The notes under the pieces: generated by a model
The model's input: the letters and a program-made list of their open reading frames with translations, nothing else
Database searches by the model: none
Told to the model about the DNA's origin: nothing
Made by a program: the position numbers and the translations under genes
IMG/VR virus record: IMGVR_UViG_3300029983_000007
Span: 124,001-188,000 of that record
Direction: 5' to 3' (one strand)
DNA: 64,000 bases
Part shown: positions 17,854-63,667 of the stretch, one piece after another
Numbering within the stretch: position 1 is the stretch's first letter
Layout: every line of letters begins with the position of its first letter

Positions 17854-17881
17854 ATTATATGACTATTAATTTTTTTTGTTT
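17854..17881 (-). promoter_or_regulatory. Putative middle promoter AAAC-N18-TATAAT
   Basis: One of nine copies with identical spacing in this window. Confidence 0.65.
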
Positions 17882-17966
17882 AATTTTTTTTAATATATAC
17901 AATTAAATATCAAAGAATTTAGTACCTTTACAACGTCTAATAAAAATATATTAAAGTATTCATATT

Positions 17967-18722
17967 ATGAAATTTATAAAACATTATAATGAAGGTTACA
18001 ACATGACAGAAAAAATAACTGATATTAGAGAGTTTTTTTCAAATTTAAAACTGATAACATATCACTTTGAAGATTATCACATTTTCAATAAATTCAAAAA
18101 TGATATTGAAAAAGAACTAAATACAACATGTGGTATGTCATTTTTTGGCTTTACAATTAATGGAAGATTTTTTGATCCAATTATAGATACAGTAACCGTT
18201 GAATTACACAAAATGTTTGATATAATTGTCAATAATGATTATCAAGGCATATATGATGGATGTAATGAAAGAAAATTCGGTGGCAATAGATTTGAATATT
18301 ATGAAAGAAACACAAAATATTATTTATATTTAGAAAATCACATATCAAAGGTAATTTCAAGTAATGTTAATGATGATAGATTTACACCTTATTATGATAT
18401 TAGATTCAGAACAAGAATTTTCACAAACAGTGACAAAATAGAGGAAGAAAAAGAAACAAAAATAATTAATGATATCATAGATAAATATAATCTTAAAGAA
18501 AAATACGAGATTTTAATAGATAGTAGTGGTAGTAGACGTGAAATAAGAATAATTAGAAAAAATAGAATAATATTGAATTCCAAACAGAAAAAAGAAATTG
18601 AAAAAGCTAAATTATTTGGATTACAGAAATATGAAGAATTAAAAGAAAGAATTCCAGCACAGATAGAATATAATATTCTTATGGACAATATAATTAAAAA
18701 TAAAAATAAATTTAATTTGTGA
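17967..18722 (+). CDS. Hypothetical protein, MKFIKHYNE...KFNL tag class
   Basis: Terminal motifs; follows the late-type motif at 17888-17899. Confidence 0.75.
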   Translation: MKFIKHYNEGYNMTEKITDIREFFSNLKLITYHFEDYHIFNKFKNDIEKELNTTCGMSFFGFTINGRFFDPIIDTVTVELHKMFDIIVNNDYQGIYDGCNERKFGGNRFEYYERNTKYYLYLENHISKVISSNVNDDRFTPYYDIRFRTRIFTNSDKIEEEKETKIINDIIDKYNLKEKYEILIDSSGSRREIRIIRKNRIILNSKQKKEIEKAKLFGLQKYEELKERIPAQIEYNILMDNIIKNKNKFNL

Positions 18723-19540
18723 AAAATTACAATCAATATATCAAAGAATCTAATATGACTAAACTCACTCAACCAAGTGATGAGGAAATTAAAGACGCTG
18801 AAAAAATATTAGCAGAAGGAAAAGATCCTGATTCAAATATGAAAGATGTTGGTTGTTTTTATATAGATGTATCGGGCAAATATTCAGTTTATTATACTTT
18901 TTGGAGATGGAATCCAAAATCTGCAAATTGCTATTATATATGTAATCTAAGTACTGACTTTGTGACAGCAGTTAAAAAAGCTGCTAAAGCTTCAGGTAGA
19001 ATTCCAGTTGTTATTGATAGATTCGGTACATATGCTGGACTATTTCAAGCAGAAAAAAATAAAATATTATCATTCGGTAAATATCGTGGTCAAACAATAG
19101 GAGAAATATTCGTAACTGATCCTCAATATATTGTATATTTATCAAAAGATTTTCATGGTAATGCAGAGATGGCAAAAGAAATTCAAGATTATAAAAATTT
19201 ATTTTTTGAAACTTTAACTAAGAAAAATCAAGAAGAAAGTACTAGCAAATATATAGGAGAAGTAGGAACTAAAATTACAATAAAAGCTACAGTTTATAAT
19301 TTTAATGTGAATCAGAGTGCATTTGGACCACAATACACTGCGAAATTAACTGATGATGATGGAAATAGATATATAGCTTATAATATTGGCAGAACTCTTA
19401 GAAAAAATGATGTTGTATATATGACAGCAAAAGTAAAAGAGCATAAAGAAATAGTAGGAATTAAATTTACTTCTATATACTATTGTAAGATAACTAATGT
19501 ATTCAACTTAGATGATGATATGGCAAAATTCAATTTATAA
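18719..19540 (+). CDS. Tag-class protein with FGKY/H (DUF3820/ExoX-C-like) motif and OB-fold-like C-terminus
   Basis: LSFGKYRGQTIGEIFVTDPQYIVYL; SKYIGEVG.KI...FG...AKVKEH; ends AKFNL. Confidence 0.6.
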   Translation: MKNYNQYIKESNMTKLTQPSDEEIKDAEKILAEGKDPDSNMKDVGCFYIDVSGKYSVYYTFWRWNPKSANCYYICNLSTDFVTAVKKAAKASGRIPVVIDRFGTYAGLFQAEKNKILSFGKYRGQTIGEIFVTDPQYIVYLSKDFHGNAEMAKEIQDYKNLFFETLTKKNQEESTSKYIGEVGTKITIKATVYNFNVNQSAFGPQYTAKLTDDDGNRYIAYNIGRTLRKNDVVYMTAKVKEHKEIVGIKFTSIYYCKITNVFNLDDDMAKFNL

Positions 19541-19542
19541 TT

Positions 19543-19965
19543 ATGTTAATGTACGAAAGTTTTTTAGATTTTTTTAATAAAAAATCAAGTCCTTCTATTA
19601 AATTAGCAATATCAATAGTTTCTTTATTTAATTCAATTGATAATAATTTAAAATGTTATTATATAAAAAATAATAATTTAATATCAATAAAAAATAACAA
19701 TGAAATATTATTAACTATAATGTTTTATAAAATAAAAGTGAATGATAGTTATTATTTTGATGCTATTAAATTTGAAGAGTTAAATTTAGAAAAATATAAA
19801 AATATTAAAGATTTTATGATAGATGTTCTTGATGTTGGTGATATTATAACATTTAAACATATTGATATAAAAGAAAATGATATTCCTAATATCATAGATA
19901 ATTTAACCAAAGAAAATTATGATGATTTCTTAATTCAAATGAGTGCAAACAAATTCAACATATAA
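19543..19965 (+). CDS. Hypothetical protein, ...ANKFNI tag class
   Basis: Starts MLMYESF, ends SANKFNI. Confidence 0.7.
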   Translation: MLMYESFLDFFNKKSSPSIKLAISIVSLFNSIDNNLKCYYIKNNNLISIKNNNEILLTIMFYKIKVNDSYYFDAIKFEELNLEKYKNIKDFMIDVLDVGDIITFKHIDIKENDIPNIIDNLTKENYDDFLIQMSANKFNI

Positions 19966-20219
19966 AAAAAGACTGTCAAATGACAGTCTTTTTCTTTTAA
20001 TCTACCAATTTTACCCTTTCTATCATCAAATCTTTTTTCAAGATCAATTAAATGATAACTCCATTTGTTAGGAAAATCTAATAATCTTAAGTTTAATTTT
20101 TGCACATCTTTGTGTACTTCAGTTAATTTAGCTTCAATCAATATTGATGGAGCTTCGTAACCATTACGGTTTACGATTTCGACTCTCCAAAGTCGAGTTT
20201 TAGATATTGTTTTCATCAT
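19935..20219 (-). CDS. Hypothetical protein (3' end uncertain; reads through the terminator)
   Basis: ORF preceded by AAAC-N18-TATATT at 20267-20294. Confidence 0.45.
   Translation of the reverse strand: MMKTISKTRLWRVEIVNRNGYEAPSILIEAKLTEVHKDVQKLNLRLLDFPNKWSYHLIDLEKRFDDRKGKIGRLKEKDCHLTVFFYMLNLFALI
19966..19993. terminator. Bidirectional terminator
   Basis: aaaaagactgtca-aa-tgacagtcttttt. Confidence 0.8.
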
Positions 20220-20292
20220 CGTTAATGATGGCGATTGGTGGAGAATGTAAATTAATTTTCATAAGTAATATATCTAATTTTTTAAATAAAGT

Positions 20293-20793
20293 TTATTTCT
20301 TTATTGACATTGCAATATCATAGTACCTACGAGGATTGTTACATTCTAATTCAATTGCTAATTTTAAAAATTCTGTTGCAACTCCAGTATTATTAGGATA
20401 ACCAGTTTGAGATTTTTTGTAATCTCTAATAAATTTTCTTAATTTATTATCATCATCAGAATAAATTTCTTTGAAATCTTTCTTTTCTTTGACACTAAAT
20501 GATGATCCATCAATGAAATATTTTAAATATTTCAAAAAGTGATTATGGCTAAAAACTTCATAATCTGTTTCACATCCATTATAATAAAACATTTTATACC
20601 TAGATTTTTTTGTACCAATATTGTAATCTTCATTAAAAAAAAATTCTAATCTATTACTAGGTATTCTATTTTTATTATACATGAGATAAAATAATTTTCT
20701 TGTCATATCTCCATTATTAACACCATTTGGTATTTTTGATTCATTCCATTCTATGCTATCATATAAAAATTGTTCTTGATCCGTTAATATCAT
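20293..20793 (-). CDS. Hypothetical protein
   Basis: 166-aa ORF preceded by AAAC-N18-TATAAA at 20807-20834. Confidence 0.75.
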   Translation of the reverse strand: MILTDQEQFLYDSIEWNESKIPNGVNNGDMTRKLFYLMYNKNRIPSNRLEFFFNEDYNIGTKKSRYKMFYYNGCETDYEVFSHNHFLKYLKYFIDGSSFSVKEKKDFKEIYSDDDNKLRKFIRDYKKSQTGYPNNTGVATEFLKLAIELECNNPRRYYDIAMSIKK

Positions 20794-20908
20794 ATTGTTT
20801 TTGTTTTTTATAGTTTAAAATATTTGAGTTGTTTATTTTATAATACCATACCAATAGATTGTAAATTTAGGACTACAATATATTTATATATAGAATAAAA
20901 ATATTAAT

Positions 20909-21984: not shown

Positions 21985-22020
21985 ATTAAAGATTAAACTA
22001 TAGTTTAATCTTTAATTCAT
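21981..22020. repeat. Perfect 40-bp palindrome across convergent stop codons
   Basis: atgaattaaagattaaacta/tagtttaatctttaattcat. Confidence 0.95.
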
Positions 22021-23554
22021 CATATTTATATTGTTGTTTTTTATATAGTTCATCTCTTCTTGATTCATATTGTTTCCATAATATCGTTTTATATTCAGGA
22101 TGAAATATATCTACTAAATCAAAAACTATTAATTTAGTTTTTAATTTGTGTAGACGAAGACCACGCCCAATTGACTGTAATACTACCTGTCCGCTACGAA
22201 AACTATCTAGAAATATTATATTGTTTATAGCTTTTATCGACACACCTGTACTTAGTGTTCCGTAGCTGGCTACTAATATTTTAGGATTACCTGTAGTATC
22301 TTCCATTATTTTTTTTATATATTCTCTCTTTTCAGTACTTACACTACCGTCAATGAAAAACACATCTTTACCAATACAATTATCCTTTAAATGATTAAAT
22401 ATCTCAGTTCCATATGTAATAGTATGAAATAGTAATAATGAATTAGATTTAAATTTATCTGTCAAATTTTTAACAAAAGTCTTTCTTTTAGCTGAATTAT
22501 GAATGTATTCACGTTCCAGATCATACGCACGGCGCCCATCACTTTTCTTAACATTATAAACTCCTTCAGCAAACTTATGATTATCATGATGTAACATAAT
22601 AACTTTTATTTTAAGTTCAGCTATCAATCCTTTATCCATAAGTTTTTTTGCATTAATAGTTATAAGTTTAGGACCTAATAAAGATTGTATAGTCAATATC
22701 TCAACAGATGAATCAGAAGGATATGTACCTGACATTCCTGCCCGTATTTTAGCAATACCAAAAGTTTTTGTTAATATAGATTGAATTGTTGCAGCCTTCG
22801 CTGTATGAGCCTCATCACAAAAAACAATTTCAAATTGTGAAAACCAATCTTTTGGATATTTTTCTAATGATTGATAAGTGCCAATATATACATTAGGTAA
22901 TTTTTCTCCTTCTCTATATTTTCTTGGTTTATCACTCATAACTTCATCTATACGAATATCTAATGGAGTTTTATTATCATTATTAAAACCGTAGTTATAG
23001 TCATTCAAATCATTATAAAATTGAGTAACTAAACTTATACTTGGTACAATTAATAAAACCTTAGCCTTAGGATTTACTTTTTTTAAGTAATAAAAAAGTA
23101 ATGTACCAAATACTAATGATTTACCACCTGCAGTAGCAATTTCAATTAATCCGTATTGATGTTTTAATAATTGAAATATTGCATCTACTTGATGTTCATA
23201 AGGCATAAATGGTTTACCATCAGGAGTTTTATGATCTTTATAAAAATCATCAATAAATTCTTGTAATTTTTCTTTTGATATGTCTTTATTGCGTGGAAAT
23301 TGGTATTGATTTTCTATTATAAATTTGTAACCATACTCTTTGCAGCATTTATAAATTTCACCCCATAAACCGAAGTTAATCACGCCATCTGAGAAATAGC
23401 TAATTCCGCCATCCCAAACGCCGAGCTTAAACCTTTTCATAAAACGGTAATTATTAACTTTTCTTGTTAAGTATAATTTAAGTTGATTATATTCACCTTT
23501 TGTTGATTCAGTTAGAATTAATTTTGAATTATCTTTGTTTAGTTTAAATTTCAT
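21998..23554 (-). CDS. uvsW: UvsW-like SF2 DNA helicase
   Basis: WDGxI N-terminus, ATAGGKS, DEAH, GMSGT, STGVSI, QSIGRGLR. Confidence 0.9.
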   Translation of the reverse strand: MKFKLNKDNSKLILTESTKGEYNQLKLYLTRKVNNYRFMKRFKLGVWDGGISYFSDGVINFGLWGEIYKCCKEYGYKFIIENQYQFPRNKDISKEKLQEFIDDFYKDHKTPDGKPFMPYEHQVDAIFQLLKHQYGLIEIATAGGKSLVFGTLLFYYLKKVNPKAKVLLIVPSISLVTQFYNDLNDYNYGFNNDNKTPLDIRIDEVMSDKPRKYREGEKLPNVYIGTYQSLEKYPKDWFSQFEIVFCDEAHTAKAATIQSILTKTFGIAKIRAGMSGTYPSDSSVEILTIQSLLGPKLITINAKKLMDKGLIAELKIKVIMLHHDNHKFAEGVYNVKKSDGRRAYDLEREYIHNSAKRKTFVKNLTDKFKSNSLLLFHTITYGTEIFNHLKDNCIGKDVFFIDGSVSTEKREYIKKIMEDTTGNPKILVASYGTLSTGVSIKAINNIIFLDSFRSGQVVLQSIGRGLRLHKLKTKLIVFDLVDIFHPEYKTILWKQYESRRDELYKKQQYKYDELKIKL

Positions 23555-24410: not shown

Positions 24411-24459
24411 AGTTATTACTTTATTTTTATTTTTATGTATTATAAATAACTGGTATAGT

Positions 24460-25194
24460 TTAAATTTTTGTGAAATTAAGATCAAAATAATAGTCAAAAT
24501 TATATTGGCTAGATGGTTTATTTTGATTATACAACAGAGTTATGTTATTAAAATTGTAAGGATCATAACCTTGTACACTAACATTGGTTAGATTTTCAGT
24601 TTTATACACATCAGGATTAAATTTTGGATTATATTGTAATATAATATTATTATAAATAGTTTGGTTTGTTATACTATAATAACTCACATAAAATTGTACA
24701 GAATCTAATCTATATCTACTGAATATATTACTATTTATATATTCATATATAGCATTATTTATATCATTTGAATAGATATCGTCTTGTCTTATAATTTTAA
24801 ATACTCTTTGTTCTTTTATTTTGAAAAATAAATAATCTTTTAATATTTGAGAGCCATTAATATTTATTTGCCATCTTGTATTATTATTCTTATCTGATTC
24901 TGTTTGACTATATGGTATAATTACTTGATTATTATCTTTTAAATCTGATAAATTTTCATTAAAATTAACTTCCCATCCATCAGGTATTGTATTGATGTCA
25001 TAGTATTGATATCCATTATTCCCATTGGTTGTATCATTTACAATTTGACTAAATTTTATAGCGTCATCATTAATTGAGATTTTATCTTCTGTATAAATTA
25101 TTTTACCACCAAAAAAAGTTCTTAATTCTGTTTGATTCATTGTACCTGGTATAGAGTTTACAGAAAATTTCTTTAATATCAAATTGCTTTTCAC
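24460..25194 (-). CDS. Hypothetical protein, probably structural
   Basis: 244-aa N/Y-rich ORF at the end of the structural operon. Confidence 0.65.
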   Translation of the reverse strand: MKSNLILKKFSVNSIPGTMNQTELRTFFGGKIIYTEDKISINDDAIKFSQIVNDTTNGNNGYQYYDINTIPDGWEVNFNENLSDLKDNNQVIIPYSQTESDKNNNTRWQININGSQILKDYLFFKIKEQRVFKIIRQDDIYSNDINNAIYEYINSNIFSRYRLDSVQFYVSYYSITNQTIYNNIILQYNPKFNPDVYKTENLTNVSVQGYDPYNFNNITLLYNQNKPSSQYNFDYYFDLNFTKI

Positions 25195-25890: not shown

Positions 25891-26231
25891 TATATGTTAA
25901 ATTTATTTGCTTCTAATTCATATTCATTCATATTTACTGTACCCATAAATTTATAATTATTAATTTCATAAAAATTATCAGTCAGATTATCTTCATATTC
26001 TGTCCAACCCCATTTATCATCTTCAACATTACCTCGATTTGGATTATATCCAATAAATATATATTTTGAATTAATACTCCTATTACTCAAAAAACCTTTA
26101 ATTCTATTTTCGCTACACTTTATTTGTCTCAAAGAGTCTTCAAATCTTTCATCAGTTGACATTAGCCAATGTCTACATGAATCATATAAATTAGAGTCAA
26201 AAACATCTTCAAATATTTTAATATACTTCAT
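25890..26231 (-). CDS. Tag-class small protein, paralog 3 of 3
   Basis: MKYIKIFE...HWLMSTDERF...ANKFNI. Confidence 0.75.
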   Translation of the reverse strand: MKYIKIFEDVFDSNLYDSCRHWLMSTDERFEDSLRQIKCSENRIKGFLSNRSINSKYIFIGYNPNRGNVEDDKWGWTEYEDNLTDNFYEINNYKFMGTVNMNEYELEANKFNI

Positions 26232-27868
26232 ATTTTAAATTTTAGGTTACCAGAGTCGTATATTCTGTATATTTTTCTATCAATCATAATTTGATGTTCA
26301 GTTTTATTTTTATCAAAACCTTGCTTGACTAATAAATCTTTTCTGAAGTTAAATCTATGATGTCTGATTCCGTCAATTATATAGTAATAATTTGGTTGTG
26401 TTTTTCCGTCATATTTAAATCCAAGAGTTTCATATAATTTACCTTGACTAAAACTTCTATCAGCGTATGTGGATATTTCATTTGGTTTATAATTTTTCAT
26501 GAAATATTTAAATAATCTTGATGCACCGCCAACAACGTTAGTATTTAATTTATTACAGAAACGTAATAGTTCATATTCACCTTTATTTGTTGATTTTTTA
26601 CCCATTGCTATACGTCTATTACCGAAAGTCATCAGACTAACTAATTCATCATTATAAAATAATCCAATTTTAACTTTTGATCCGACAAATCCTTGAATGT
26701 GATTGGTATCAAGAAATTCTCTAACCAACTTATTGTCAATTATTTCTTTAATTTCGCATTTTCTCGCATATAATTTAATAGTATTTTTACCTAATTTATT
26801 TAATATTATTGATTTAACGATTTCTTGTTTATATAACCAATCATCTTCCCATATATGAATTAATTGTATTCCTTGTTTTTCACACAACTCAGTTTTATTT
26901 AAATGATAATTATTTTCTTTGTGCAATTCATTATGCCAATATACTCCATTGAATTCAAACGCTATTTTTAAATCTGGTATATAAATATCTAATTCATATG
27001 GATTTAAAATAGTTCTATCATTGTATATTATATTAATCTTACAATTGTTTTTTATAAAAATGTGTAATTGAGTTTCATATCCACTATTTGAAAATGATCC
27101 AATTGGATTACATACAGTACAAATAACAGTCTTAGAAATTTTCCTATTATATAAAATATTAGCTACAATATTAAAATTGTGATTTTTTTTACAATCACAT
27201 TTAAATGTATAAATATTATCAATCAATGATATAATATTATTATTTTCATATAATTTTAATATTTTTTTAGTCCTATTTTTTTTTATTTTATCTTTTATTT
27301 CTAAAAATGAAAATGGATTATCAAACCCATGATTTTTTAAATTTGTTTCTTTTATTTTTTCTTTTATTTTTTCTGACTGCATTAGAATACCATTAAATCT
27401 GTCATTCATTGTGTTTTTGAATTTTAATTTAATTTCATTTGATTGCATAGGATTTAATACCTTATAATTATTGAAAGTGGTTTTTTCTTTTTTTAATTTA
27501 ATATCATTTAATTTAGAAACGTTATCAACTCCATATTTTTCTAAACAAGTTCTTTTTGATTTTACTGAATTATTATAATTTTCAACTCCATATTTTTCTA
27601 AGTTGGTTTTTTTAGATTTAAAATTGAAGCATTTTTTACAAGTGTAAATATCATATTTTGATATATTTTTATTATATTTTTGATAAGTTATGATTTTTTC
27701 ATTGTCACAAATGTCACATTTTACCAACAATTTAACCGCACTATTGATTGGTAATTGTGATATCAGTATTTCAATATTATCTCCACTTGATATGTTATTA
27801 TACCATTTTTTATAGTGAGATATTGTTTTATTACTAACTTTTATGTTTATTGTATTTTCTACTATCAT
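26228..27868 (-). CDS. Free-standing homing-endonuclease-like protein (KYGV repeats, PD-(D/E)xK core, Hef-like C-terminus)
   Basis: VKCDIC, LEKYGVEN repeats, ELDIYIPDLKIAFEFNGVYWH, LIHIWEDDW, YELLRFC, YADRS; paralog of 45687-47573. Confidence 0.75.
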   Translation of the reverse strand: MIVENTINIKVSNKTISHYKKWYNNISSGDNIEILISQLPINSAVKLLVKCDICDNEKIITYQKYNKNISKYDIYTCKKCFNFKSKKTNLEKYGVENYNNSVKSKRTCLEKYGVDNVSKLNDIKLKKEKTTFNNYKVLNPMQSNEIKLKFKNTMNDRFNGILMQSEKIKEKIKETNLKNHGFDNPFSFLEIKDKIKKNRTKKILKLYENNNIISLIDNIYTFKCDCKKNHNFNIVANILYNRKISKTVICTVCNPIGSFSNSGYETQLHIFIKNNCKINIIYNDRTILNPYELDIYIPDLKIAFEFNGVYWHNELHKENNYHLNKTELCEKQGIQLIHIWEDDWLYKQEIVKSIILNKLGKNTIKLYARKCEIKEIIDNKLVREFLDTNHIQGFVGSKVKIGLFYNDELVSLMTFGNRRIAMGKKSTNKGEYELLRFCNKLNTNVVGGASRLFKYFMKNYKPNEISTYADRSFSQGKLYETLGFKYDGKTQPNYYYIIDGIRHHRFNFRKDLLVKQGFDKNKTEHQIMIDRKIYRIYDSGNLKFKI

Positions 27869-27898: not shown

Positions 27899-27926
27899 AT
27901 TATAAAAATTTATTCATGTTTTGTTT
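27899..27926 (-). promoter_or_regulatory. Putative middle promoter AAAC-N18-TATAAT
   Basis: Exact spacing; 30 nt upstream of the endonuclease start. Confidence 0.55.
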
Positions 27927-43214: not shown

Positions 43215-43267
43215 AATTCATCTATTTTTTTTTAAATTATAGTCATTAAATATATTATAGTTTAATT

Positions 43268-45572: not shown

Positions 45573-45678
45573 TTAATTAATATTATTATTTTTTGTGTAA
45601 TATTATAATAAAAAGTTGGATATTGATGATTTGTGATATTAAACTTTTTATATATGTTATTATAAAATAAAAAAAATG

Positions 45679-47585
45679 AAAAGTTTATGTTAATAACAAA
45701 AGAAATTGAAATTTTCAATAAAATTATACCTATATCTGAATTGTCTTTACATAGTCATAAAAAAATTGTGGTTAAATGTGATAATTGTGATACTATTAAA
45801 GAGATTACATATCAATCTTATAATAATTCAACTAATAATAATTCAACTGATTATTATTGTCATAATAAGGAATGCATTAATAAAAAAAGAATAATATCAA
45901 CAAGAGAAAAATATGGTGTTGATAATGTTTCTCAATTAAAAATGATAAAAGATAAAAAAATACAAACATGTTTAGATAATTTTGGTGTTAAATTTCCAAC
46001 TCAATCAGATAAAGTAAAATCGAAAAGTAAAAATACAAATTTAGAGAAATATGGAGTAGAATGGCAAACTCAATCTAATAATTTTAAAGAAAAAAGTAAA
46101 ATTACAAATTTAGAAAGATATGGAACTGAAAGCGCAATGCAATCTGATATAATTAAAAATAAGGTTAAAAATACTTGTTTAATTAAATATGATGTAGATT
46201 CATATATGAAAACATATGATTTTAAAAATAAATCTATAATCACAAATTTGAAAAATTTTGGAGTAAAATATCCATCTCAAAATAATCAGATTCAAGATAA
46301 AATAAAAAAAACTAATATTATAAGATATGGTGTAGAAAGACCAACTCAAAATGAAAAAATAAAAATAAAAATAAAAAATTCATATCAGTATAATTTTGGT
46401 GTAAATAATATTAAAAATGTAAAAAATTTGAAAGATAAATTACAAAAAACTAATTTATACAGATATAATACTGATTTTTATTCTCAGTCTGAACAATATA
46501 AAAAAATAGTTAAAAATAGAAAAATTATTTTATTATCCAAAAAATACAACTTAAAAATTGAAGATATAGTAGATGATAATATTGTATTGGTTTGTGATAA
46601 ATGTGATAATAAATTTGTCGCTACATATCAACAATTATACAATAGATTTCTTTATAATACTCCTTTGTGTACTATTTGTAATCCGATTGAATCTTTGTCT
46701 TATGTTGAAACAGAATTTCAAGAATTTATTTCAAAAAATTATAATGGAAAAATATTTTTAAACAATAGAAAAATAATTAAGCCTAATGAATTAGATGTTT
46801 ATTTACCTGAATTAAATTTAGCGTTTGAATTTAATGGATTATATTGGCATTCCGAACGTTATAAAGATGATAATTATCATTTAATAAAAACTGAAATGTG
46901 TGAAAAATTAGATATACAATTGTTGCATATTTGGGAAGATGATTGGAATTTCAAAAAAGATATAGTAAAATCAATAATATTAAATAAATTAGGTAAAAAT
47001 AGTAATAAAATATATGCCAGAAAATGTAAAATAAAAGAAATAAGTGATACTAAATTACTTAGACATTTTCTTGATACTAATCATATTCAAGGTTATATAA
47101 ATTCAAAAATTAATATAGGTTTATTTTATAATGATGAATTATTTAGCCTGATGACTTTTGGTAGCAAACGAAAGATTATGAATTCTTTGTCCAATGATGA
47201 TGAATTTGAAATCTATAGATTTTGTAATAAATTGAATACTAATATTATAGGTGGAGCTAGTAAATTGTTTTCTTTTTTTATTAAAAATTATAATTTTTCA
47301 AAAATCATAAGCTATTCTGATAGATCATATTTTAATGGTAATAATTATTTAAAATTAGGATTTAAATTTTATAGTAATACGTCTCCAAATTATTATTATA
47401 CAATAAAAGGTAAAAGAGAATATAGATTTAAATTTAGAAAAGATATATTAATTAAGGAAGGTTATGATTCTAATAAGACTGAACAACAAATTATGTTAGA
47501 TAGAAATATTTTTAGAATATATAATTCTGGTAATTTGAAATTTATATATGAAAAAAGAAAAAGTTTATGTTAATAACAAAAGAAA
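45679..47585 (+). mobile_element. Endonuclease gene bracketed by 27-bp direct repeats
   Basis: aaaagtttatgttaataacaaaagaaa at 45679-45705 and 47559-47585. Confidence 0.55.
45687..47573 (+). CDS. Free-standing homing-endonuclease-like protein (KYGV repeats, PD-(D/E)xK core, Hef-like C-terminus)
   Basis: About 9 [KR][YF]GV-type repeats; ELDVYLPELNLAFEFNGLYWH; LLHIWEDDW; YSDRS. Confidence 0.75.
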   Translation: MLITKEIEIFNKIIPISELSLHSHKKIVVKCDNCDTIKEITYQSYNNSTNNNSTDYYCHNKECINKKRIISTREKYGVDNVSQLKMIKDKKIQTCLDNFGVKFPTQSDKVKSKSKNTNLEKYGVEWQTQSNNFKEKSKITNLERYGTESAMQSDIIKNKVKNTCLIKYDVDSYMKTYDFKNKSIITNLKNFGVKYPSQNNQIQDKIKKTNIIRYGVERPTQNEKIKIKIKNSYQYNFGVNNIKNVKNLKDKLQKTNLYRYNTDFYSQSEQYKKIVKNRKIILLSKKYNLKIEDIVDDNIVLVCDKCDNKFVATYQQLYNRFLYNTPLCTICNPIESLSYVETEFQEFISKNYNGKIFLNNRKIIKPNELDVYLPELNLAFEFNGLYWHSERYKDDNYHLIKTEMCEKLDIQLLHIWEDDWNFKKDIVKSIILNKLGKNSNKIYARKCKIKEISDTKLLRHFLDTNHIQGYINSKINIGLFYNDELFSLMTFGSKRKIMNSLSNDDEFEIYRFCNKLNTNIIGGASKLFSFFIKNYNFSKIISYSDRSYFNGNNYLKLGFKFYSNTSPNYYYTIKGKREYRFKFRKDILIKEGYDSNKTEQQIMLDRNIFRIYNSGNLKFIYEKRKSLC

Positions 47586-49717: not shown

Positions 49718-49763
49718 AATTCAATTTTTTTTATTATCTTTGTATTATATAAAAAAATTAAAT

Positions 49764-55345: not shown

Positions 55346-55359
55346 TGTGTTTTTGTTTT

Positions 55360-55425
55360 TATATATAAAATATTAACTAATTTGTTTGAAAATAGATAAA
55401 AATGAAACTTTTTTATTTATATATA
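55360..55425. promoter_or_regulatory. Divergent promoter region of the RHH cassette
   Basis: Minus strand AAAC-N18-TATATA at 55360-55387; plus strand TTTATATATA at 55416-55425. Confidence 0.6.
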
Positions 55426-55444
55426 CTATAAAAATGCTAAGAAT

Positions 55445-56430: not shown

Positions 56431-56442
56431 ATATTATTAAAT

Positions 56443-56476
56443 AAAAGAAAGAGATAAATAATTATCTCTTTCTTTT
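56443..56476. terminator. Bidirectional terminator between the endonuclease and the topo N-half
   Basis: aaaagaaagagataa-ataa-ttatctctttctttt. Confidence 0.75.
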
Positions 56477-58264
56477 TAATATTTTATCAGTAATTAATAT
56501 TTCTTTGACTTTTACTAATATAATTTCATTGTTTCTTAATATTGGAATCTCATGATTTTCACTAAATGTATATTCATATCCATTGATATTTAATTTTATT
56601 ATATTAGTCTTGTGAGTTTCAATTATATTGAGTATTTTTTTCCATTCATTGTTGTGTGTTAAAACTTCATCGTCATAATTAATATCTTTTATTGCTACAT
56701 ATCCTCTTTTAGTTAGAACTAACGTATTTTCTTCTATACAATCAGCATCTGTCATCATTATAACTTTACCGTATCTTAATGTTCTTGTTGATGTGTATTG
56801 TTTACCAAATTCTAATCCTAATATTTTTATAATTGAAGTAATTTCATCGTTTTCTCTCATTTTTTGTATAGAAACATCCCTTACATTCAATGGTTTACCC
56901 TTAAGAGGGTATATTCCATAATAGTCATTTCCAACAACTGATAATCCTGCACGAGCTGTTGATTTTGCTGAATCTCCTTCAGTTAGTATTAATCCACATT
57001 TCATGCTATGTGGTTGCTTACCTGCCATATTAGCATCATCAAGCTTCGCTATTTTAACTTTAATTTTCTGATTATTCTGAGTTGATTTCTTAGCATCTTG
57101 TAATTCTTTGAATGATGCAAAATTTACTATGTCATTTTTTATTTGAGATGACATAAGTTTTTTGATAAATGAATCTGAAACAGTTACATCTTTGATGATT
57201 TCAGTTATCATTCTTGTAGTTAGATTTTCTTTTGTTTGTGTTTCAAATGATGGATTAGGAATTTTACAACTAAGAAATAAAAATAAATGATTTTTGATCA
57301 TTGATTGTTTAACGCTTGTTGATTTTATTTTATCATCAAGTGATTTGGTGATTTGATTAGTTATGTAATTAACATGAGTACCTCCAATATGAGTAGATAT
57401 TCCATTTACCATTGATACTTGTTGAAACATATCATTAGGTGTGCGTGCTATACCGACTTCCCAGTTCTCATTTATTTTTTCGTAGAAGAACTCTTCATCA
57501 TCATTGATAAACATCTTCATGTAATCTTTAAATGACTTGATAGGTATTAATACATCATTATAGTAGACTTTAACTCCAGTGCTATAAGCTGCAATGTCAA
57601 TAGCTCGTTTTAAAAATATTGATTGAATTTCATCTGTTATTTCAGTTAGATTAAATTTTTCAAAATCTGGATAATATGTAATTTTTGTGTAATTTTTGTC
57701 TGATGTAGTTATTTTTGGCTTAGTTTTATCAGACATATTATTGGTGAATGTTTGAATGTATTTATGCTTACCATCTGCAGTTTCAATTGTAAATTTCTTT
57801 GAGAATATGTTAGTTGTTTTTATTCCAATTCCATGTGTACCACCAACCATCCTTTTATCATCGTCCGTGAAATTCTCCCCCGTGAGCAAATTTCCGAAAA
57901 TCAACTCACACACATAAATTTTATGTTCTTTGTGCATAACAATAGGTACTCCTGGTCCGTCGTTTTCAATTGTTATGTGGTCTTTATCTACGTTTATCTT
58001 GATGTATTTGACTTGACCATCTGTTCTGATGTAATGATCTGATGCATTGGTTAATGCTTCATCGAATAGTTTAATAAATCCTGCATTATAATTTACTTCT
58101 TTATATACAAATTTGTTGTCTTTAATTTCATTAATATCTTCAAATACATACATTTTGGTTGGTTCAGTATATATATTTCCAATATACATTCCTGGTTTTT
58201 TTAATACGTGTTCAATTGGTGTTAATTTCTTATATCTATCCTCTATTGTTTTTTTATTCATCAA
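56462..58264 (-). CDS. Type IIA topoisomerase N-half (GHKL ATPase plus part of TOPRIM) ending in a 92-aa N-intein
   Basis: HVLKKPGMYIG, DEALTNA.D, NDGPGVP, GGTHGIG.K, LTEGDSAK, PLKGKPLNV, IMMTDAD/CIEENT. Confidence 0.92.
   Translation of the reverse strand: MMNKKTIEDRYKKLTPIEHVLKKPGMYIGNIYTEPTKMYVFEDINEIKDNKFVYKEVNYNAGFIKLFDEALTNASDHYIRTDGQVKYIKINVDKDHITIENDGPGVPIVMHKEHKIYVCELIFGNLLTGENFTDDDKRMVGGTHGIGIKTTNIFSKKFTIETADGKHKYIQTFTNNMSDKTKPKITTSDKNYTKITYYPDFEKFNLTEITDEIQSIFLKRAIDIAAYSTGVKVYYNDVLIPIKSFKDYMKMFINDDEEFFYEKINENWEVGIARTPNDMFQQVSMVNGISTHIGGTHVNYITNQITKSLDDKIKSTSVKQSMIKNHLFLFLSCKIPNPSFETQTKENLTTRMITEIIKDVTVSDSFIKKLMSSQIKNDIVNFASFKELQDAKKSTQNNQKIKVKIAKLDDANMAGKQPHSMKCGLILTEGDSAKSTARAGLSVVGNDYYGIYPLKGKPLNVRDVSIQKMRENDEITSIIKILGLEFGKQYTSTRTLRYGKVIMMTDADCIEENTLVLTKRGYVAIKDINYDDEVLTHNNEWKKILNIIETHKTNIIKLNINGYEYTFSENHEIPILRNNEIILVKVKEILITDKILKRKR
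56465..56740 (-). other. Split intein, N-fragment (IntN)
   Basis: Block A CIEENTLV, GYVAIKDI..DDEVLTH, block B FSENH, then stop. Confidence 0.9.
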
Positions 58265-58286
58265 ATTTTAATTAATTTTTACATTG

Positions 58287-58314
58287 TATATATCTTAAAA
58301 ATTATGTAAAGTTT
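58287..58314 (-). promoter_or_regulatory. Putative middle promoter AAAC-N18-TATATA
   Basis: Upstream of the topo N-half. Confidence 0.65.
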
Positions 58315-58372
58315 TGATTTATAATATAAAGAGTGAAAATATGATGATTTACAATGATATATATGTTAAAAA

Positions 58373-58687
58373 TTAAATATTATTTAATTTTTCTATCTTC
58401 AATTTTCTACATATTTTTTGATGGTATGATTCTATAAATTTTTCAAAATCTTCAAAATTTAGAAATTCTTGTTTAAGTTCAACATGAGGATAAGGTGCTG
58501 TACTATATATGTTTTTATGAAAACATATTACTTCATTAGAGTATTCATCCATATATGAATTTATGTTTATATAGCCACCATTTTCTCTTATGATATAATA
58601 ATTTGAACATCTAAGTTTATAGCCAATTGATGTTATAAGTTTTAATACACGGTCATCAATGTAATCTTTGCTTAAATGATCATTCAT
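58373..58687 (-). CDS. Small protein, RxxKL tag class, paralog of the next gene
   Basis: KLI.SIGYK, ENGGYININ, EFLNF; ends RKLKIEKLNNI. Confidence 0.7.
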   Translation of the reverse strand: MNDHLSKDYIDDRVLKLITSIGYKLRCSNYYIIRENGGYININSYMDEYSNEVICFHKNIYSTAPYPHVELKQEFLNFEDFEKFIESYHQKICRKLKIEKLNNI

Positions 58688-58983
58688 AATAAGTTTTTTA
58701 ATTTTAGTTTTCTGAATATTCTTTTATGATATTCTTTTATGAATGTTTCAAAATTTTTAAAATTTAAAAATTCTTTTGAATAAACTTTGATTTCATTTGC
58801 TATTTGGTAATATTTACTGAATGATATAATTTTATCACCATCATTTAGTACATAAAAATTTATATTTATATATCCATTTTCTTCAAATAACGTAAATTTA
58901 TCAAATCTATTTTTATAACCTATAGACTCAATTAATTTGATGCATTTTTTGTCGTAATATTCTCTATATCTAAAATCAATCAT
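58684..58983 (-). CDS. Small protein, RxxKL tag class
   Basis: Ends RKLKLKNLL; AAAC-N18-TATATA at 59014-59041. Confidence 0.7.
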   Translation of the reverse strand: MIDFRYREYYDKKCIKLIESIGYKNRFDKFTLFEENGYININFYVLNDGDKIISFSKYYQIANEIKVYSKEFLNFKNFETFIKEYHKRIFRKLKLKNLL

Positions 58984-59233
58984 GTGATGTTATTATGCTT
59001 ATAATTAAAAATTTATATATTATTATTTTGATGACATGTTTTTGATATTTGTTAAATAAATGACTAAAATATATAATAAATATGTTTTTATTTTTTTTAT
59101 TGAAATAGTTTATTTACTTTTGTGAAGTAATTGAATTATAATAATATTTATAATAATATTATTAATTAGTTTTTAATTTAAATTATTATGTATATCTTTG
59201 TATTGTAATATAAAAACTTAATAATGAATTTTT

Positions 59234-59431
59234 ATGAATGAACTAAAAATTGCAAAAATATTAAAACACACTATGATATTAGAATATGTGTGTGAAAAAA
59301 ATAAAACTAAAATAACTTCAATAATTGAAAATCCTGAAATAAGTGATGGACAATATTATGAGGACTGGCATTATAAGTATATTAAAATAAAATGTGAATC
59401 TTGTGGTGAATTACATAAATTTGAAATTTAA
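59234..59431 (+). CDS. Small zinc-ribbon-like protein
   Basis: YVCEK...IKCESCGELH; -7 boxes at 59115-59122 and 59193-59200. Confidence 0.6.
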   Translation: MNELKIAKILKHTMILEYVCEKNKTKITSIIENPEISDGQYYEDWHYKYIKIKCESCGELHKFEI

Positions 59432-60531: not shown

Positions 60532-60547
60532 TAATTTTTTGTCAGGA

Positions 60548-61816: not shown

Positions 61817-62063
61817 AATTTAATTTATTTAATTTATCTTTTCTTTCATCTTTTATTGTTCCAAAGTATTCATAAAAATAATCATAATGCATATTATTCT
61901 CTAATGAGAATACTATATTACCAATATCATTAGTCATTATTACTTCACCATGATGCTGATATATAACTCTGTATTTTTTGCCTTTTTCAAAATAGGTTCT
62001 ATTATTCATTATAGATATTATTGGTTTTTTACAATAATATAAATCATCAATCTTTGGATTCAT
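61797..62063 (-). CDS. Small beta-rich family member, RxxKL tag class
   Basis: YYCKK...FEKGKKY...YFGTIKDERKDKLNKL. Confidence 0.7.
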   Translation of the reverse strand: MNPKIDDLYYCKKPIISIMNNRTYFEKGKKYRVIYQHHGEVIMTNDIGNIVFSLENNMHYDYFYEYFGTIKDERKDKLNKLNYEIPAQ

Positions 62064-62346
62064 TATCTAAATCACTTTTTAAATAATTAGCTAATCTTTG
62101 AATTTTATATGCATCATCAGGATTAAAAATAAATTCATCAAATGCTCCATATTTGCACCTATATCCAAATATATATTTAACTCCGTGTTTTAATCTACTC
62201 CAAAATGAACCTCTATTTAAAAGTACATGAGCATAGCACATTGGATAACTTTTACCAGTTTCATTTGTATCTTCATCATATAAGAACACAATTTGATGAT
62301 CTGTTGAATGACAACTACAAATTAATATATCTTCTTTCTTTTTCAT
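62047..62346 (-). CDS. Hypothetical protein (CxCxxxxH)
   Basis: LICSCHSTDHQ; FWSRLK..VKYIFGY. Confidence 0.7.
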   Translation of the reverse strand: MKKKEDILICSCHSTDHQIVFLYDEDTNETGKSYPMCYAHVLLNRGSFWSRLKHGVKYIFGYRCKYGAFDEFIFNPDDAYKIQRLANYLKSDLDNESKD

Positions 62347-62513
62347 AATTTAATATTTTTTTTTAATAATTCTTCTAACTCGTTTATAGTATTTTCACAT
62401 AATATAGTTTGTTCTCTTACTCTAAATCCTCTTGTCCACGAGTATTTTTTGTCTGTTAAATGTAATTGTTCTTTTCTTAATTCAATTAATCTATTTTCAA
62501 TCAATTCTTCCAT
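62343..62513 (-). CDS. 56-aa hypothetical protein (not in ORF track)
   Basis: MEELIENRLIELRKEQL...; fills the gap and is ATGA-coupled to the next gene. Confidence 0.55.
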   Translation of the reverse strand: MEELIENRLIELRKEQLHLTDKKYSWTRGFRVREQTILCENTINELEELLKKNIKL

Positions 62514-62811
62514 TATTTAATTTTTCTAATTTTCTTTTTCTATATCCTTGATGATCACTAAAATATTCAGAAAATAGATTGTTTTTTCTATCTGTTTCAA
62601 GCCAAAATGCATACTTATCATCATCAGTATAATTTATTGATATTATAACTTCATCTGATTTGCTATCATTGTACATAGTTTTAGTAGCAGATTTTGTGTG
62701 ATTAACAGTGTATATGTTATTTTCTTTGAATATTAATTTTTCATCAGATTTTCTATATACATCTTTTGTACAATAAACTTTATCTCCTGCGTTTAGTATT
62801 TTTACTGACAT
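62497..62811 (-). CDS. Small beta-rich family member, RxxKL tag class
   Basis: GDKVYC...EYF...YRKRKLEKL. Confidence 0.7.
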   Translation of the reverse strand: MSVKILNAGDKVYCTKDVYRKSDEKLIFKENNIYTVNHTKSATKTMYNDSKSDEVIISINYTDDDKYAFWLETDRKNNLFSEYFSDHQGYRKRKLEKLNNGRID

Positions 62812-63077
62812 TCTATAAATAATTTTTCTAATTTCATTTTTCTATATTCTTTTATGCTCATAAAATATTCATAATAATTCCATCCATATGCATTTTTTAG
62901 ATTAAGAGTATAAAAAAACCCATTACTTTCAATTGAAACTAAACTTTCTATACCTTTCTGCTTATACACAAAATGAACAATGTATACATTGTTCATTTTC
63001 ATGACTAATGTATTATCAAAATCATAAAAATCATTTATGCAATAAACTTTATCTCCTTGCTTTGGTATTAACTTCAT
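62802..63077 (-). CDS. Small beta-rich family member, RxxKL tag class
   Basis: GDKVYC...EYF...YRKMKLEKL. Confidence 0.7.
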   Translation of the reverse strand: MKLIPKQGDKVYCINDFYDFDNTLVMKMNNVYIVHFVYKQKGIESLVSIESNGFFYTLNLKNAYGWNYYEYFMSIKEYRKMKLEKLFIECQ

Positions 63078-63400
63078 TGTTTCAATATATTTAATAATTT
63101 TCTTTTTCTTTTTTTACTAATCCATTTATTTCTATTAAAATCAAATACATTTTTTATAATATTGTCACTTGGATTATTTGTGACAGTTTTGCATTCTTTT
63201 AAATCAATCCAACAATGTGATATTCCATCTTCTGAAACATAACCATAAAAACCAGGTAGATAACAACGAGTATCATGATCTGGTATATCATATTCAGTAA
63301 TCAATTTAAATTCTTGAACCTTACCAATAGGTTCAACTGTTGAATTGAATGTAAAGTGAATAATATTACAATCTTTTATCCATTCTTCTATTTCTGTCAT
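63074..63400 (-). CDS. Small protein, RxxKL tag class
   Basis: Ends KKRKRKLLNILKQ. Confidence 0.7.
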   Translation of the reverse strand: MTEIEEWIKDCNIIHFTFNSTVEPIGKVQEFKLITEYDIPDHDTRCYLPGFYGYVSEDGISHCWIDLKECKTVTNNPSDNIIKNVFDFNRNKWISKKRKRKLLNILKQ

Positions 63401-63432
63401 ACTATATAAAGTTAATTAAAAATAATGAGATT

Positions 63433-63609
63433 TTACTCATTATTATCATTTTTTTTGTTATCTTTGTTTATTAAGTATGTAATATATTCTGATTTTGATA
63501 AATTATTTTCAATTAAATAAGTTTCTAATTTTTCATTTAACTCTTTGTCAATAGTAATACTCATCGTTGTTTTTTTATTTTCCTTTTTTGGTCTACCTAC
63601 GTCTGACAT
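63433..63609 (-). CDS. 58-aa ribbon-helix-helix protein with GRP hook (not in ORF track)
   Basis: MSDVGRPKKENKKTTMSITIDKELNEKLETYLIENNLSKSEYITYLINKD...; homolog of 55175-55345. Confidence 0.75.
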   Translation of the reverse strand: MSDVGRPKKENKKTTMSITIDKELNEKLETYLIENNLSKSEYITYLINKDNKKNDNNE

Positions 63610-63622
63610 ATTGTTTTTTATT

Positions 63623-63667
63623 TTTATAGTAAAATAGAAAAAAATGGTTTATTTTTATTTATATATA
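63623..63667. promoter_or_regulatory. Divergent promoter region of the second RHH cassette
   Basis: Minus strand AAAC-N18-TATAAA at 63623-63650; plus strand TTTATATATA at 63658-63667. Confidence 0.6.

What the first reader, a model, noticed from the sequence alone, without database searches (positions are those of the whole stretch)
17854..63650. Bipartite phage promoter AAAC-N18-TATAWW with invariant spacing
Seen: nine copies on the coding strand just upstream of starts, all with an 18-nt spacer: 17854-17881, 20267-20294, 20807-20834, 27899-27926, 43236-43263, 55360-55387, 58287-58314, 59014-59041 and 63623-63650. Near matches precede the GT fusion (1796-1823, TAAAAA), uvsY (24434-24461, TACATA) and 45687 (TAAAAT). 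The targets are replication, recombination and accessory genes. The motif does not match the Bacteroidota -33/-7 consensus. Established: an AAC core at -35 is typical of ECF-type sigma factors. Inference: a phage-encoded sigma factor defines a middle class.
Basis: partly seen in the sequence, partly recalled or inferred. Interest (0 to 1): 0.6.

Follow-up and report, generated by a model that had tools for sequence, protein, structure and literature searches.

The report
Megaphage promoter class AAAC-N18-TATA
A two-part promoter signal (AAAC, exactly 18 bases, TATA) sits in front of the replication and recombination genes of this giant Bacteroidota phage and of its relatives up to the 735-kb record holder; these phages all carry one small ECF-type sigma factor gene, which is the likeliest reader of the signal.

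Summary
In the 330-kb contig that holds the window, AAAC-N18-TATA is the top spacing-specific pair among all 4-mer pairs in 219 upstream regions (24 hits against 3.2 at other spacings, P = 2e-13). The window holds about 13 plausible sites, not nine.

The same pair ranks first in an 82%-identical relative's spacer count, in the 735-kb phage LR756501 (58 against 6.4, P = 1e-34), in LR756502, and in 40 more IMG/VR loci. It is absent from a Ralstonia jumbo phage.

It is one of three promoter classes:
- Host Bacteroidota type, TTTG-N19/20-TAnnTTTG, before runs of small ORFs.
- This class, before topoisomerase II, ThyA/methylases, the UvsW operon and UvsX.
- A TTAATATATA class with no -35 element.

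No sigma gene lies in this contig, which is incomplete. LR756501 and three other genomes over 630 kb each carry one ECF-type sigma. A 208-aa ortholog lies on a 235-kb contig that very probably belongs to this phage.

The link between sigma and promoter, and the "middle" timing, are inferred. No RNA run was listed, so start sites could not be mapped.

The parts
17854..17881 (-). Class A promoter (AAAC-N18-TATAAT), 33 nt upstream of the 161-aa ORF 17336-17821.
   Evidence: In G003 the AAAC and TATAA are kept while the spacer has substitutions. The LR756501 ortholog also has a class A site.
20267..20294 (-). Class A promoter, 48 nt upstream of the 94-aa ORF 19935-20219.
   Evidence: The LR756501 ortholog LR_590412-590627 also carries a class A site.
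20807..20834 (-). Class A promoter (ends in aACTATAAA), 14 nt upstream of the 166-aa ORF 20293-20793.
26376..26403 (-). Candidate internal class A promoter (TTACTATATAAT), inside the 3' end of 26228-27868 and 145 nt before the start at 26231.
   Evidence: It matches the extended -10 form TTACTATA seen in 32 sigma-bearing loci. Function uncertain.
27899..27926 (-). Class A promoter, 31 nt upstream of the DUF7487 gene 26228-27868. This heads a nine-gene minus-strand run that ends with UvsW (21998-23554).
   Evidence: Not conserved at the same place in G003.
43236..43263 (-). Class A promoter, 22 nt upstream of a 59-aa ORF. It heads the run 42683-43033, DNA methyltransferase 41854-42690 and thymidylate synthase 41010-41837.
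45659..45686 (-). Class A match, 87 nt upstream of the 406-aa ORF 44352-45572. It overlaps the divergent near match 45641-45668 (+), which lies before the DUF7487 gene 45687-47573.
55360..55387 (-). Class A promoter, 15 nt upstream of a 56-aa ORF and 166 nt upstream of the topoisomerase II gene 53290-55194.
55405..55432 (+). Class A match on the plus strand, 13 nt upstream of a 53-aa ORF that is followed by 55573-56430.
58287..58314 (-). Class A promoter, 23 nt upstream of the topoisomerase II large-subunit gene 56462-58264.
   Evidence: A class A site lies next to the LR756501 region that matches this protein (679571-681064; site listed before a start at 681070), with an unrelated spacer.
59014..59041 (-). 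Class A promoter, 31 nt upstream of ORFs 58684-58983 and 58373-58687.
   Evidence: In G003 the AAAC and TATATA are kept while the spacer has changes.
62383..62410 (-). Class A match (ATACTATAAA), 37 nt upstream of the 99-aa ORF 62047-62346.
63623..63650 (-). Class A promoter (TTTTACTATAAA), 14 nt upstream of a 58-aa ORF that heads a run of small minus-strand ORFs.
1796..1823 (-). Near match (AAAC-N18-TAAAAA), upstream of the glycosyltransferase gene 3-1775.
   Evidence: This relaxed pattern is not clearly above chance in the window (24 against 16).

Best explanation
These sites are promoters of a phage-specific class. The most likely mechanism is that host RNA polymerase core, carrying a phage-encoded ECF-type (group 4) sigma factor, reads them.

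Proposed recognition:
- The sigma-4 domain reads the AAAC at about -35.
- The sigma-2 domain reads (A/C)TATAww at about -10.
- The short rigid ECF linker would explain why the spacing is fixed at 18 nt.
- Transcription would start about 6-8 nt after the hexamer, in the conserved A-rich stretch, giving leaders of about 10-25 nt.

The class drives the DNA replication, recombination and nucleotide genes: topoisomerase II subunits, ThyA and methylases, the UvsW operon, and UvsX. It sits between two other classes: host-sigmaA-type promoters before runs of small ORFs (early), and a TTAATATATA class (probably late).

Shown: the motif, its fixed spacing, its position before starts, its conservation across very distant relatives, the three classes, and the presence of one ECF sigma gene family wherever the motif was found.

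Inferred: that this sigma reads the motif, that the sigma-bearing 235-kb contig is part of this genome, the start sites, and the temporal order.
For: Motif statistics:
-.
- Independent replication in G003 (82% nt identity; 24 intergenic at N18 against 2-8).
- LR756501, 53% aa identity in topo II: 58 against 6.4, P = 1e-34.
- LR756502: 21 against 4.8.
- G007: 13 against 2.3.
- Forty further sigma-bearing IMG/VR loci: 17 against 2.5 and 53 against about 7.

Conservation:
- Core positions are 92% identical against 81% for spacer and flanks in 11 aligned G000/G003 sites, P = 0.006.

Sigma factor:
- LR756501 has one Sigma70_r2 match, an ECF-type protein (TIGR02937, 56 bits, cut-off 42.9).
- A compact 208-aa ortholog is on G007 and G006 (73.7 bits).
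- Orthologs are in LR756504, LR756502 and LR745206. None is in the Ralstonia phage RsoM2USA, which also lacks the motif.
- The sigma-4 recognition helix (TNLSTIKSQIKKGR) is invariant across the family, matching the invariant AAAC.

No alternative reader was found in G000, G007 or LR756501:
- No beta or beta' RNA polymerase, MotA or AsiA.
- No T4 gp55 homolog.

Literature:
- ECF promoters share an AAC core at -35, adhere closely to consensus, and sigmaW sites read tGAAACnTTTt (PMC5758882).
- Class A sites often read AAACTTTT.

Evidence that G007 belongs to the same phage:
- Its sub-contig G006 comes from the sample that holds a 100%-identical sister contig of this one.
- Same GC content.
- Complementary gene content against LR756501: 80 matches only in G000, 47 only in G007, 5 in both.
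- The sigma variants fall into three groups that co-occur by sample with the three UvsW lineages.
Against: - No sigma gene lies in this contig. Physical linkage of G007 to it is not shown.
- The -10 element is TATA-type, not the CGT-type of characterised ECF sigmas (PMC5758882).
- ECF sigma genes are usually autoregulated, but no class A site lies within 720 nt upstream of the sigma gene in G007.
- Conservation of class A at orthologous genes between LR756501 and this phage is only partial (3 of 10; Fisher P = 0.27).
- A second non-host class (TTAATATATA) has no identified factor. One detectable sigma must therefore serve two classes, or an undetected factor exists.
- The one sigma-negative control has another host phylum and another GC content.
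- No RNA run was listed, so no start site or timing data exist.
Confidence: 0.6

Rival explanations
1. The sites are real promoters but are read by a host-encoded ECF sigma factor. Bacteroidota carry many of these, and the phage would be exploiting one. The phage sigma would then have another regulon, for instance the TTAATATATA class.
For: The AAC-type -35 element is generic to ECF sigmas (PMC5758882). The phage sigma scores about equally against the Bacteroidetes-type ECF model TIGR02985 (76.8 bits) and SigW, so host ECFs could be similar. The sigma gene is not autoregulated by class A.
Against: The motif is kept unchanged in phages that differ by up to 60% in protein sequence and in GC content (22-32%), and so presumably have different hosts. 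The phage sigma's recognition helix is invariant across the same set. Host ECF regulons are normally held off by anti-sigma factors.
Confidence: 0.12
2. Sigma appropriation in the T4 middle-promoter manner. The TATA element would be read by the same factor that reads the TTAATATATA class, or by a modified host sigma. AAAC would be the binding site of a separate phage activator placed at a fixed distance.
For: The -10 parts of class A (aTATAww) and of the no-(-35) class (TTAATATATA) share ATATA and sit at the same distance from start codons. Only one sigma is detectable for two non-host classes. T4 relatives use this logic (own knowledge).
Against: No MotA or AsiA homolog is present in G000, G007 or the complete LR756501. 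The AAAC position relative to TATA is that of a -35 element, not of a -30 MotA box. An ECF sigma with an AAC-reading type of domain is present in every motif-bearing genome tested.
Confidence: 0.13
3. The sites are weak variants of host sigmaA promoters, or a compositional artefact of AT-rich intergenic DNA.
For: The genome is 24% GC. TATA-like strings are common, and the motif carries only about 12 bits.
Against: The excess is confined to one spacing. It ranks first among all pairs tested at 20 spacings (348 passed the count filter) and recurs in five independent genome sets, including two at 31-32% GC. Host-type promoters in the same genome have a quite different consensus and a different spacing.
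Confidence: 0.03

Closest known systems
ECF (group 4) sigma-dependent promoters, e.g. Bacillus subtilis sigmaW (tGAAACnTTTt ... CGTA)
   Same: Both have an AAAC/AAC core at -35, a frequent T-run just downstream of it, close adherence to consensus and a rigid spacer. The cognate sigma has only sigma-2 and sigma-4 domains (about 200 aa) and passes the TIGR02937 cut-off.
   Different: The -10 element is (A/C)TATAww, not CGT-type. The sigma is phage-encoded and falls below the cut-off of every named ECF subfamily. No autoregulatory site and no recognisable anti-sigma lie next to it. Some relatives carry a ~90-aa insertion inside the sigma-4 helix-turn-helix.
Phage-encoded sigma cascades (SPO1 gp28 and gp33/34; T4 gp55 late promoters TATAAATA)
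   Same: A phage-specified promoter class takes over from host-type early promoters and drives a functional gene module. The genome is T4-like in UvsW, UvsX and topoisomerase II.
   Different: No gp55 homolog was detected. The class has a -35 element, unlike T4 late promoters. The sigma is ECF-type. The SPO1 and T4 details come from my own knowledge and were not tested here.
T4 middle promoters (MotA box at -30 plus sigma70 -10, with AsiA)
   Same: Both are a bipartite class in front of replication, recombination and nucleotide genes, and probably intermediate in timing.
   Different: The sequence differs, the upstream element sits at the -35 position, and no MotA or AsiA homologs are present.
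Bacteroidota sigmaA promoters (-33 TTTG / -7 TAnnTTTG)
   Same: This class is present in the same genome as a separate class, with the expected 19-20 nt spacing. It fixes the host phylum, in agreement with the Bacteroidetes host predicted for the Mahaphage clade (PMC7162821).
   Different: Class A shares neither element nor spacing with it.

Membership tests
ECF (group 4) sigma-dependent promoter | -35 element with a conserved AAC core | tested here: met
   AAAC is the most informative block of the aligned sites in G000 and LR756501. The AAC core is typical of ECF promoters (PMC5758882).
ECF (group 4) sigma-dependent promoter | Rigid spacer within the ECF range (14-17 bp between the elements) | tested here: inconclusive
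   The spacing is effectively invariant: 30 intergenic hits at N18 against 4 and 2 at N17 and N19. Whether it equals a 16-17 bp ECF spacer depends on where the -10 element is taken to begin. AAAC-N16-nATA would align with sigmaW TGAAAC-N16-CGTA, a spacing I recall from memory rather than from a tool result.
ECF (group 4) sigma-dependent promoter | Group-specific -10 element, CGT-type in the best studied groups | tested here: not met
   The -10 is (A/C)TATAww. No CG is enriched at the two positions before TATA.
ECF (group 4) sigma-dependent promoter | A cognate ECF sigma (sigma-2 plus sigma-4 only) encoded by the same genome | tested here: inconclusive
   Absent from this 330-kb contig. Present once in LR756501 and in three other closed genomes. 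Also present on G007, which is probably but not provably part of this genome.
ECF (group 4) sigma-dependent promoter | Autoregulation: the sigma gene is preceded by its own promoter type | tested here: not met
   No AAAC-N18-TATA, nor the relaxed form, lies within 720 nt upstream of the sigma gene in G007. By eye, none lies in the 83-nt gap before the LR756501 sigma gene either.
ECF (group 4) sigma-dependent promoter | Transcription starts 5-9 nt downstream of the -10 and depends on the sigma | not testable with these tools
   No RNA run was listed for this sequence. The only indirect hint is a conserved A-rich stretch 5-8 nt after the hexamer.
Housekeeping sigma70-type promoter (TTGACA-N17-TATAAT) | TTGACA-like -35 and a tolerated spacing of 16-18 | tested here: not met
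   The -35 is wAAACw, so only the AC would be shared, and the spacing is fixed. The host-type class in this genome is TTTG/TAnnTTTG.
Bacteroidota sigmaA promoter | -33 TTTG and -7 TAnnTTTG, 19-21 nt apart | tested here: not met
   Class A has neither element. A separate set of sites does: 19 and 17 intergenic hits at N19 and N20 against 0-3 at other spacings.
T4 middle promoter (MotA/AsiA sigma appropriation) | MotA and AsiA homologs encoded, and a MotA box centred at -30 | tested here: not met
   PF09158 gives only a sub-threshold match containing stop codons. PF09010 gives none in G000, G007 or LR756501.
T4 late promoter (gp55/gp33/gp45) | A gp55 homolog, and a promoter consisting of a -10 element only | tested here: not met
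   phrog_234 and phrog_12791 are absent from G000, and phrog_234 from G007 and LR756501. Class A needs the AAAC at a fixed distance.

The most novel reading that the evidence does not exclude
AAAC-N18-TATAww, together with a phage-specific ECF-type sigma, would be a conserved regulon of the whole Mahaphage-type clade of Bacteroidota megaphages, the largest known phages.

This ECF-like sigma would have evolved a TATA-type -10 specificity. In one sub-lineage it also tolerates a ~90-aa insertion inside the sigma-4 helix-turn-helix. It would take the replication module away from the host sigmaA.

A bolder reading is also not excluded. Only one sigma is detectable in a closed 735-kb genome, so the same sigma could read the no-(-35) TTAATATATA class as well, in a -35-independent mode.
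Probability: 0.45. Interest if true: 0.7.

Novelty: new variant of a known kind. Interest (0 to 1): 0.6.

Why it matters
Nothing is known about how the largest phages (over 600 kb, Bacteroidota hosts, uncultured) schedule their genes. The paper describing them mentions sigma and anti-sigma genes but reports no phage promoter analysis (PMC7162821).

- A three-class promoter grammar lets one sort roughly a thousand mostly unknown genes per genome into probable temporal and functional classes from sequence alone.
- One class is conserved from 24% to 32% GC genomes and has an obvious candidate sigma. It gives a testable pair: a 208-aa protein and a 28-bp site.
- It also offers an orthogonal sigma/promoter pair for Bacteroidota genetics, where standard promoters do not work.

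Tried and rejected
- RNA evidence: no RNA run was listed for window 53300-59290.
- Sigma in the contig: Sigma70_r2, r4_2, TIGR02937, the T4 gp55 families and the LR756501 sigma protein all gave no hit in G000.
- Synteny guess: in LR756501 the sigma gene sits next to an ExoX-like_C gene. I tested whether the window ORFs 17967-18722 and 18719-19540 are a diverged sigma. They are not.
- Circularity: the sister contig continues past our end into sequence that does not match our start, so the contig is not a permuted complete genome. That record is not held for the genome search.
- Megablast of the window against annotated phages gave no match.
- A seeded EM run on upstream regions drifted to a mixture of the other two classes. 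This was useful for discovering them but useless as a class A model.
- Promoter class at orthologous genes between LR756501 and this phage: too few pairs, not significant for class A (3 of 10, P = 0.27).
- Promoter of the sigma gene: no class A, B or C pattern upstream. A four-lineage alignment shows conserved blocks, including an inverted repeat, but no assignable promoter.
- T7-like RNA polymerase search: the control genomes were silent, so that blank is uninformative.
- Literature searches found no description of this motif or of promoters in these phages.

Full report
**What the window is.** The window is bases 124001-188000 of a 330,208-bp IMG/VR viral contig with 24% GC (JGI 3300029983, Ga0302284_1000002). 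The contig is linear and CheckV rates it 46% complete.

It is T4-like in several genes:
- a UvsW helicase;
- two topoisomerase II subunits;
- thymidylate synthase and DNA methylases;
- T4_Y16D and Phage_30_3 domains.

The closest public genome is LR756501, the 735,411-bp "uncultured phage". It has 53% aa identity in the topoisomerase large subunit, and the 636-, 642- and 635-kb genomes follow. These are the largest phage genomes described. They belong to the Mahaphage clade and are predicted to infect Bacteroidetes (PMC7162821).

The contig is not complete. A 326-kb sister contig from another sample is 100% identical over the 13.9 kb that could be compared. By its coordinates it overlaps ours from about position 143,400 to our end. 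It then runs on for about 139 kb into sequence that does not match our start.

- All nine listed copies are present on the minus strand, 14-48 nt before a minus-strand start.
- The window has 17 exact matches against 7.95 expected; no shuffle reached 17.
- Over the whole contig, intergenic matches number 30 at a spacer of 18 against 2-15 at spacers 12-24.
- Matches within 80 nt upstream of a same-strand start number 25 against 0-10. Spacers 17 and 19 give 4 and 2.
- The smaller counts at 16 and 20 are largely the same sites read two bases off, through TATATA.
- I counted every 4-mer/4-mer pair at spacings 8-27 in 219 upstream regions. AAAC-N18-TATA ranked first, with 24 against a mean of 3.2 at other spacings (Poisson P = 2e-13).
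- Aligned sites show information only at AAAC, at the base before TATA (A or C in 23 of 26) and at TATAww. The hexamers are TATAAT 8, TATAAA 8, TATATA 7 and TATATT 3.
- Eleven of the 26 upstream sites in the contig lie inside the finding's span, so the class is concentrated in this replication and recombination region.
Four exact matches are probably chance.

**It is one of three promoter classes.**
- *Class B, host type.* An EM run and k-mer statistics on the upstream regions brought out TATCTTTG as the most over-represented 8-mer (18 against 1.1). Its upstream partner gives TT[TG]G-N19/20-TAnnTTTG, with 19 and 17 intergenic hits against 0-3 at other spacings. This is the Bacteroidota housekeeping promoter. 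It precedes long runs of small ORFs, up to 21 in a row, as well as some metabolic genes.
- *Class C.* This class is TTAATATATA / TTATATATA with no -35 signal, 16-24 nt before starts. In LR756501 it is the strongest contiguous signal (TTAATATA 102 against 23; ATATATAG 57 against 13). It is independent of AAAC: only 13 of 153 sites have AAAC at the right distance. Among the ten class C genes I scanned, only a tail-fibre-like protein and a protein with a peptidase domain looked virion-related; a DnaB-like helicase and an ATPase also scored, so a late or structural role is a guess.
- *Class A, the finding.* It precedes both topoisomerase II genes, the ThyA/methylase run, the nine-gene run ending in UvsW, several DUF7487 genes and, on the companion contig, UvsX.

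Its "uvsY" label could not be verified.

**Conservation.**
- A relative from IMG/VR, G003 (256 kb, collinear, 82% nt identity where alignable), shows the same N18 peak: 24 intergenic against 2-8.
- At 11 sites that align between the two genomes, the eight core positions are 92% identical against 81% for spacer and flanks (P = 0.006). In several cases AAAC and TATA are intact around a mutated spacer.
- In LR756501, whose intergenic DNA is unalignable with ours and which has 32% GC, AAAC-N18-TATA is again the top pair (58 against 6.4, P = 1e-34).
- There the sites read wAAAC(T-rich)...aTATAww, followed by an A-rich stretch 5-8 nt later. They lie 15-24 nt before the ATG.
- One such site in LR756501 lies next to the region that matches our topoisomerase large subunit, as in our window.
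- The first 400 kb of LR756502 give the same top pair, 21 against 4.8, with some N17.

**The sigma factor.**
- This contig has no match to Sigma70_r2, r4_2, TIGR02937 or the T4 gp55 families.
- The closed genome LR756501 has exactly one Sigma70_r2 match. It is a 289-aa protein with sigma-2 and sigma-4 domains that passes the ECF superfamily model TIGR02937 (56 bits, cut-off 42.9). It is closest to SigW, SigM, RpoE and Bacteroidetes-type ECF models, but below all their cut-offs.
- It has more than 160 homologs in metagenomes, many on contigs of 100-736 kb.
- In IMG/VR, 47 loci encode a relative. Forty of them, taken in two groups, again show AAAC-N18-TATA: 17 against 2.5 and 53 against about 7. 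They also show an extended form, AAACA-N13-TTACTATA, that several of our sites match.
- LR756504, LR756502 and LR745206 each have a compact ortholog.
- The next-closest phage by topoisomerase, the Ralstonia phage RsoM2USA, has neither the sigma nor the motif.

**Does our phage have the sigma?** A 208-aa version (TIGR02937, 73.7 bits, full length) lies on IMGVR_UViG_3300028864_000014 (G007, 235,318 bp). It also lies on a 52.7-kb contig, 99.996% identical to part of G007, from sample 3300029998. That is the same sample that yielded the sister contig of our phage.

Several lines suggest G007 is another part of this genome:
- G007 has 24.4% GC and no nucleotide overlap with our contig.
- Its gene content is complementary to ours when both are compared with LR756501: 80 proteins match only G000, 47 only G007 and 5 both.
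- The three pieces (330 + about 139 + 235 kb) add up to about 705 kb, which is the length CheckV expects.
- The sigma genes fall into three variants (100, 99 and 94% identical). Each variant was found in the same samples as the matching UvsW lineage.
- G007 also carries class A and class B sites.

I therefore think it very probable, but not proven, that this phage encodes the sigma.

**Mechanism.** Neither contig of this phage, nor the closed relative, has a beta or beta' RNA polymerase, MotA, AsiA or gp55 homolog. The T7-like search was uninformative. Transcription must therefore use the host core enzyme.

The most economical reading is a cascade. Host sigmaA reads class B. The phage ECF-type sigma reads class A. 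Class C is read by an unidentified factor or by the same sigma.

Points in favour of ECF recognition:
- The AAC core, the T-run after it and the fixed spacing fit ECF promoters (PMC5758882).
- The most conserved stretch of the sigma family is the sigma-4 recognition helix, which fits an unchanging -35 element.

Points against membership:
- The -10 element is TATA-type rather than CGT-type.
- There is no class A site before the sigma gene.
- No recognisable anti-sigma lies next to it.

The sites work like ECF promoters in geometry. I do not file them as a member of any characterised ECF group.

**Limits.**
- Gene calls are my own crude longest-ORF calls. The spacing statistics do not depend on them much, but distances to starts and class lists do.
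- Temporal order is an analogy.
- No RNA run was listed.
- The negative control is a phage of another phylum.

**Verdict.** This is a new variant of a known kind, a phage sigma regulon, and I found no description of it in the literature searched.

Noticed in passing
window 3681-3712 (-), 47615-47646 (+), 49712-49742 (+), 59170-59200 (+): Host-type Bacteroidota promoters (TTTG-N19/20-TAnnTTTG, often TATCTTTG). They lie before the NadE-like gene 1887-3653, ORF 47730-48446, the ORF at about 49740, and the small-ORF run starting at 59234. Contig-wide the spacing peak is 19 and 17 hits against 0-3. This fixes the host phylum and marks a probable early class.
   Followed up: partly
window 10964-10973, 13897-13906, 13925-13934, 34593-34602, 38337-38346, 40324-40335, 55417-55426, 63659-63668 (both strands; palindromic core): A third promoter-like class, TTAATATATA / TTATATATA, with no -35 element, 16-24 nt before starts and often serving divergent gene pairs. 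It is the strongest contiguous signal in LR756501 (TTAATATA 102 against 23). No gp55 homolog is detectable even in that closed genome, so its factor is unknown.
   Followed up: partly
L041:895-1764 (-) in LR756501; alignment A1: The LR756501-type sigma (about 290 aa) carries a ~90-residue insertion inside the sigma-4 helix-turn-helix, between ...YKDIAD and the recognition helix NLSTIKSQIKKGR. The 208-aa version of our lineage lacks it; the two BLAST segments are 2-162 and 254-283. The -35 motif is the same in both groups.
   Followed up: partly
L105:10986-11717 (+), two ORFs downstream of the sigma gene on G007: A rhomboid-family intramembrane protease (PF01694, 114 bits) is encoded close to the ECF-type sigma. 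ECF systems are usually controlled by proteolysis of a membrane anti-sigma, so the neighbourhood is suggestive. The 86-aa ORF between the two genes has no Pfam match.
   Followed up: no
G000 end (330208); L010:1-7223: The contig is a fragment. A 100%-identical sister contig (Ga0302271_10000001, 326 kb) runs about 139 kb beyond our end. Together with the 235-kb sigma-bearing contig, the genome would be about 705 kb, among the largest phage genomes known.
   Followed up: partly
alignment A2 (L105:9640-9990 and three relatives): Upstream of the sigma gene, four lineages keep conserved blocks, including an inverted repeat (ACTATGTAACATAGT) and a TTGAAC...ATTATCAG stretch. No class A, B or C promoter is present. 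The sigma gene may be under a separate operator-type control.
   Followed up: no
window 26228-27868 (-), 45687-47573 (+), 55573-56430 (+): Three paralogous genes of the DUF7487 / phrog_3339 / phrog_12131 kind, labelled 'homing endonuclease' in PHROGs. Each sits just behind a class A site or near match. Their role is unclear.
   Followed up: no
window 27927-31361 (-), 31392-34571 (-): Two adjacent ORFs of 1144 and 1059 aa have no Pfam match. The second matches only an unknown-function PHROG (phrog_29329) and has a class C site upstream.
   Followed up: no
window 1887-3653 (-): A fused CN-hydrolase / NAD synthase (NadE-like) gene lies under a host-type promoter. NAD+ synthesis genes have been reported in gut jumbo phages (PMC11662467, seen).
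   Followed up: no
   Followed up: partly
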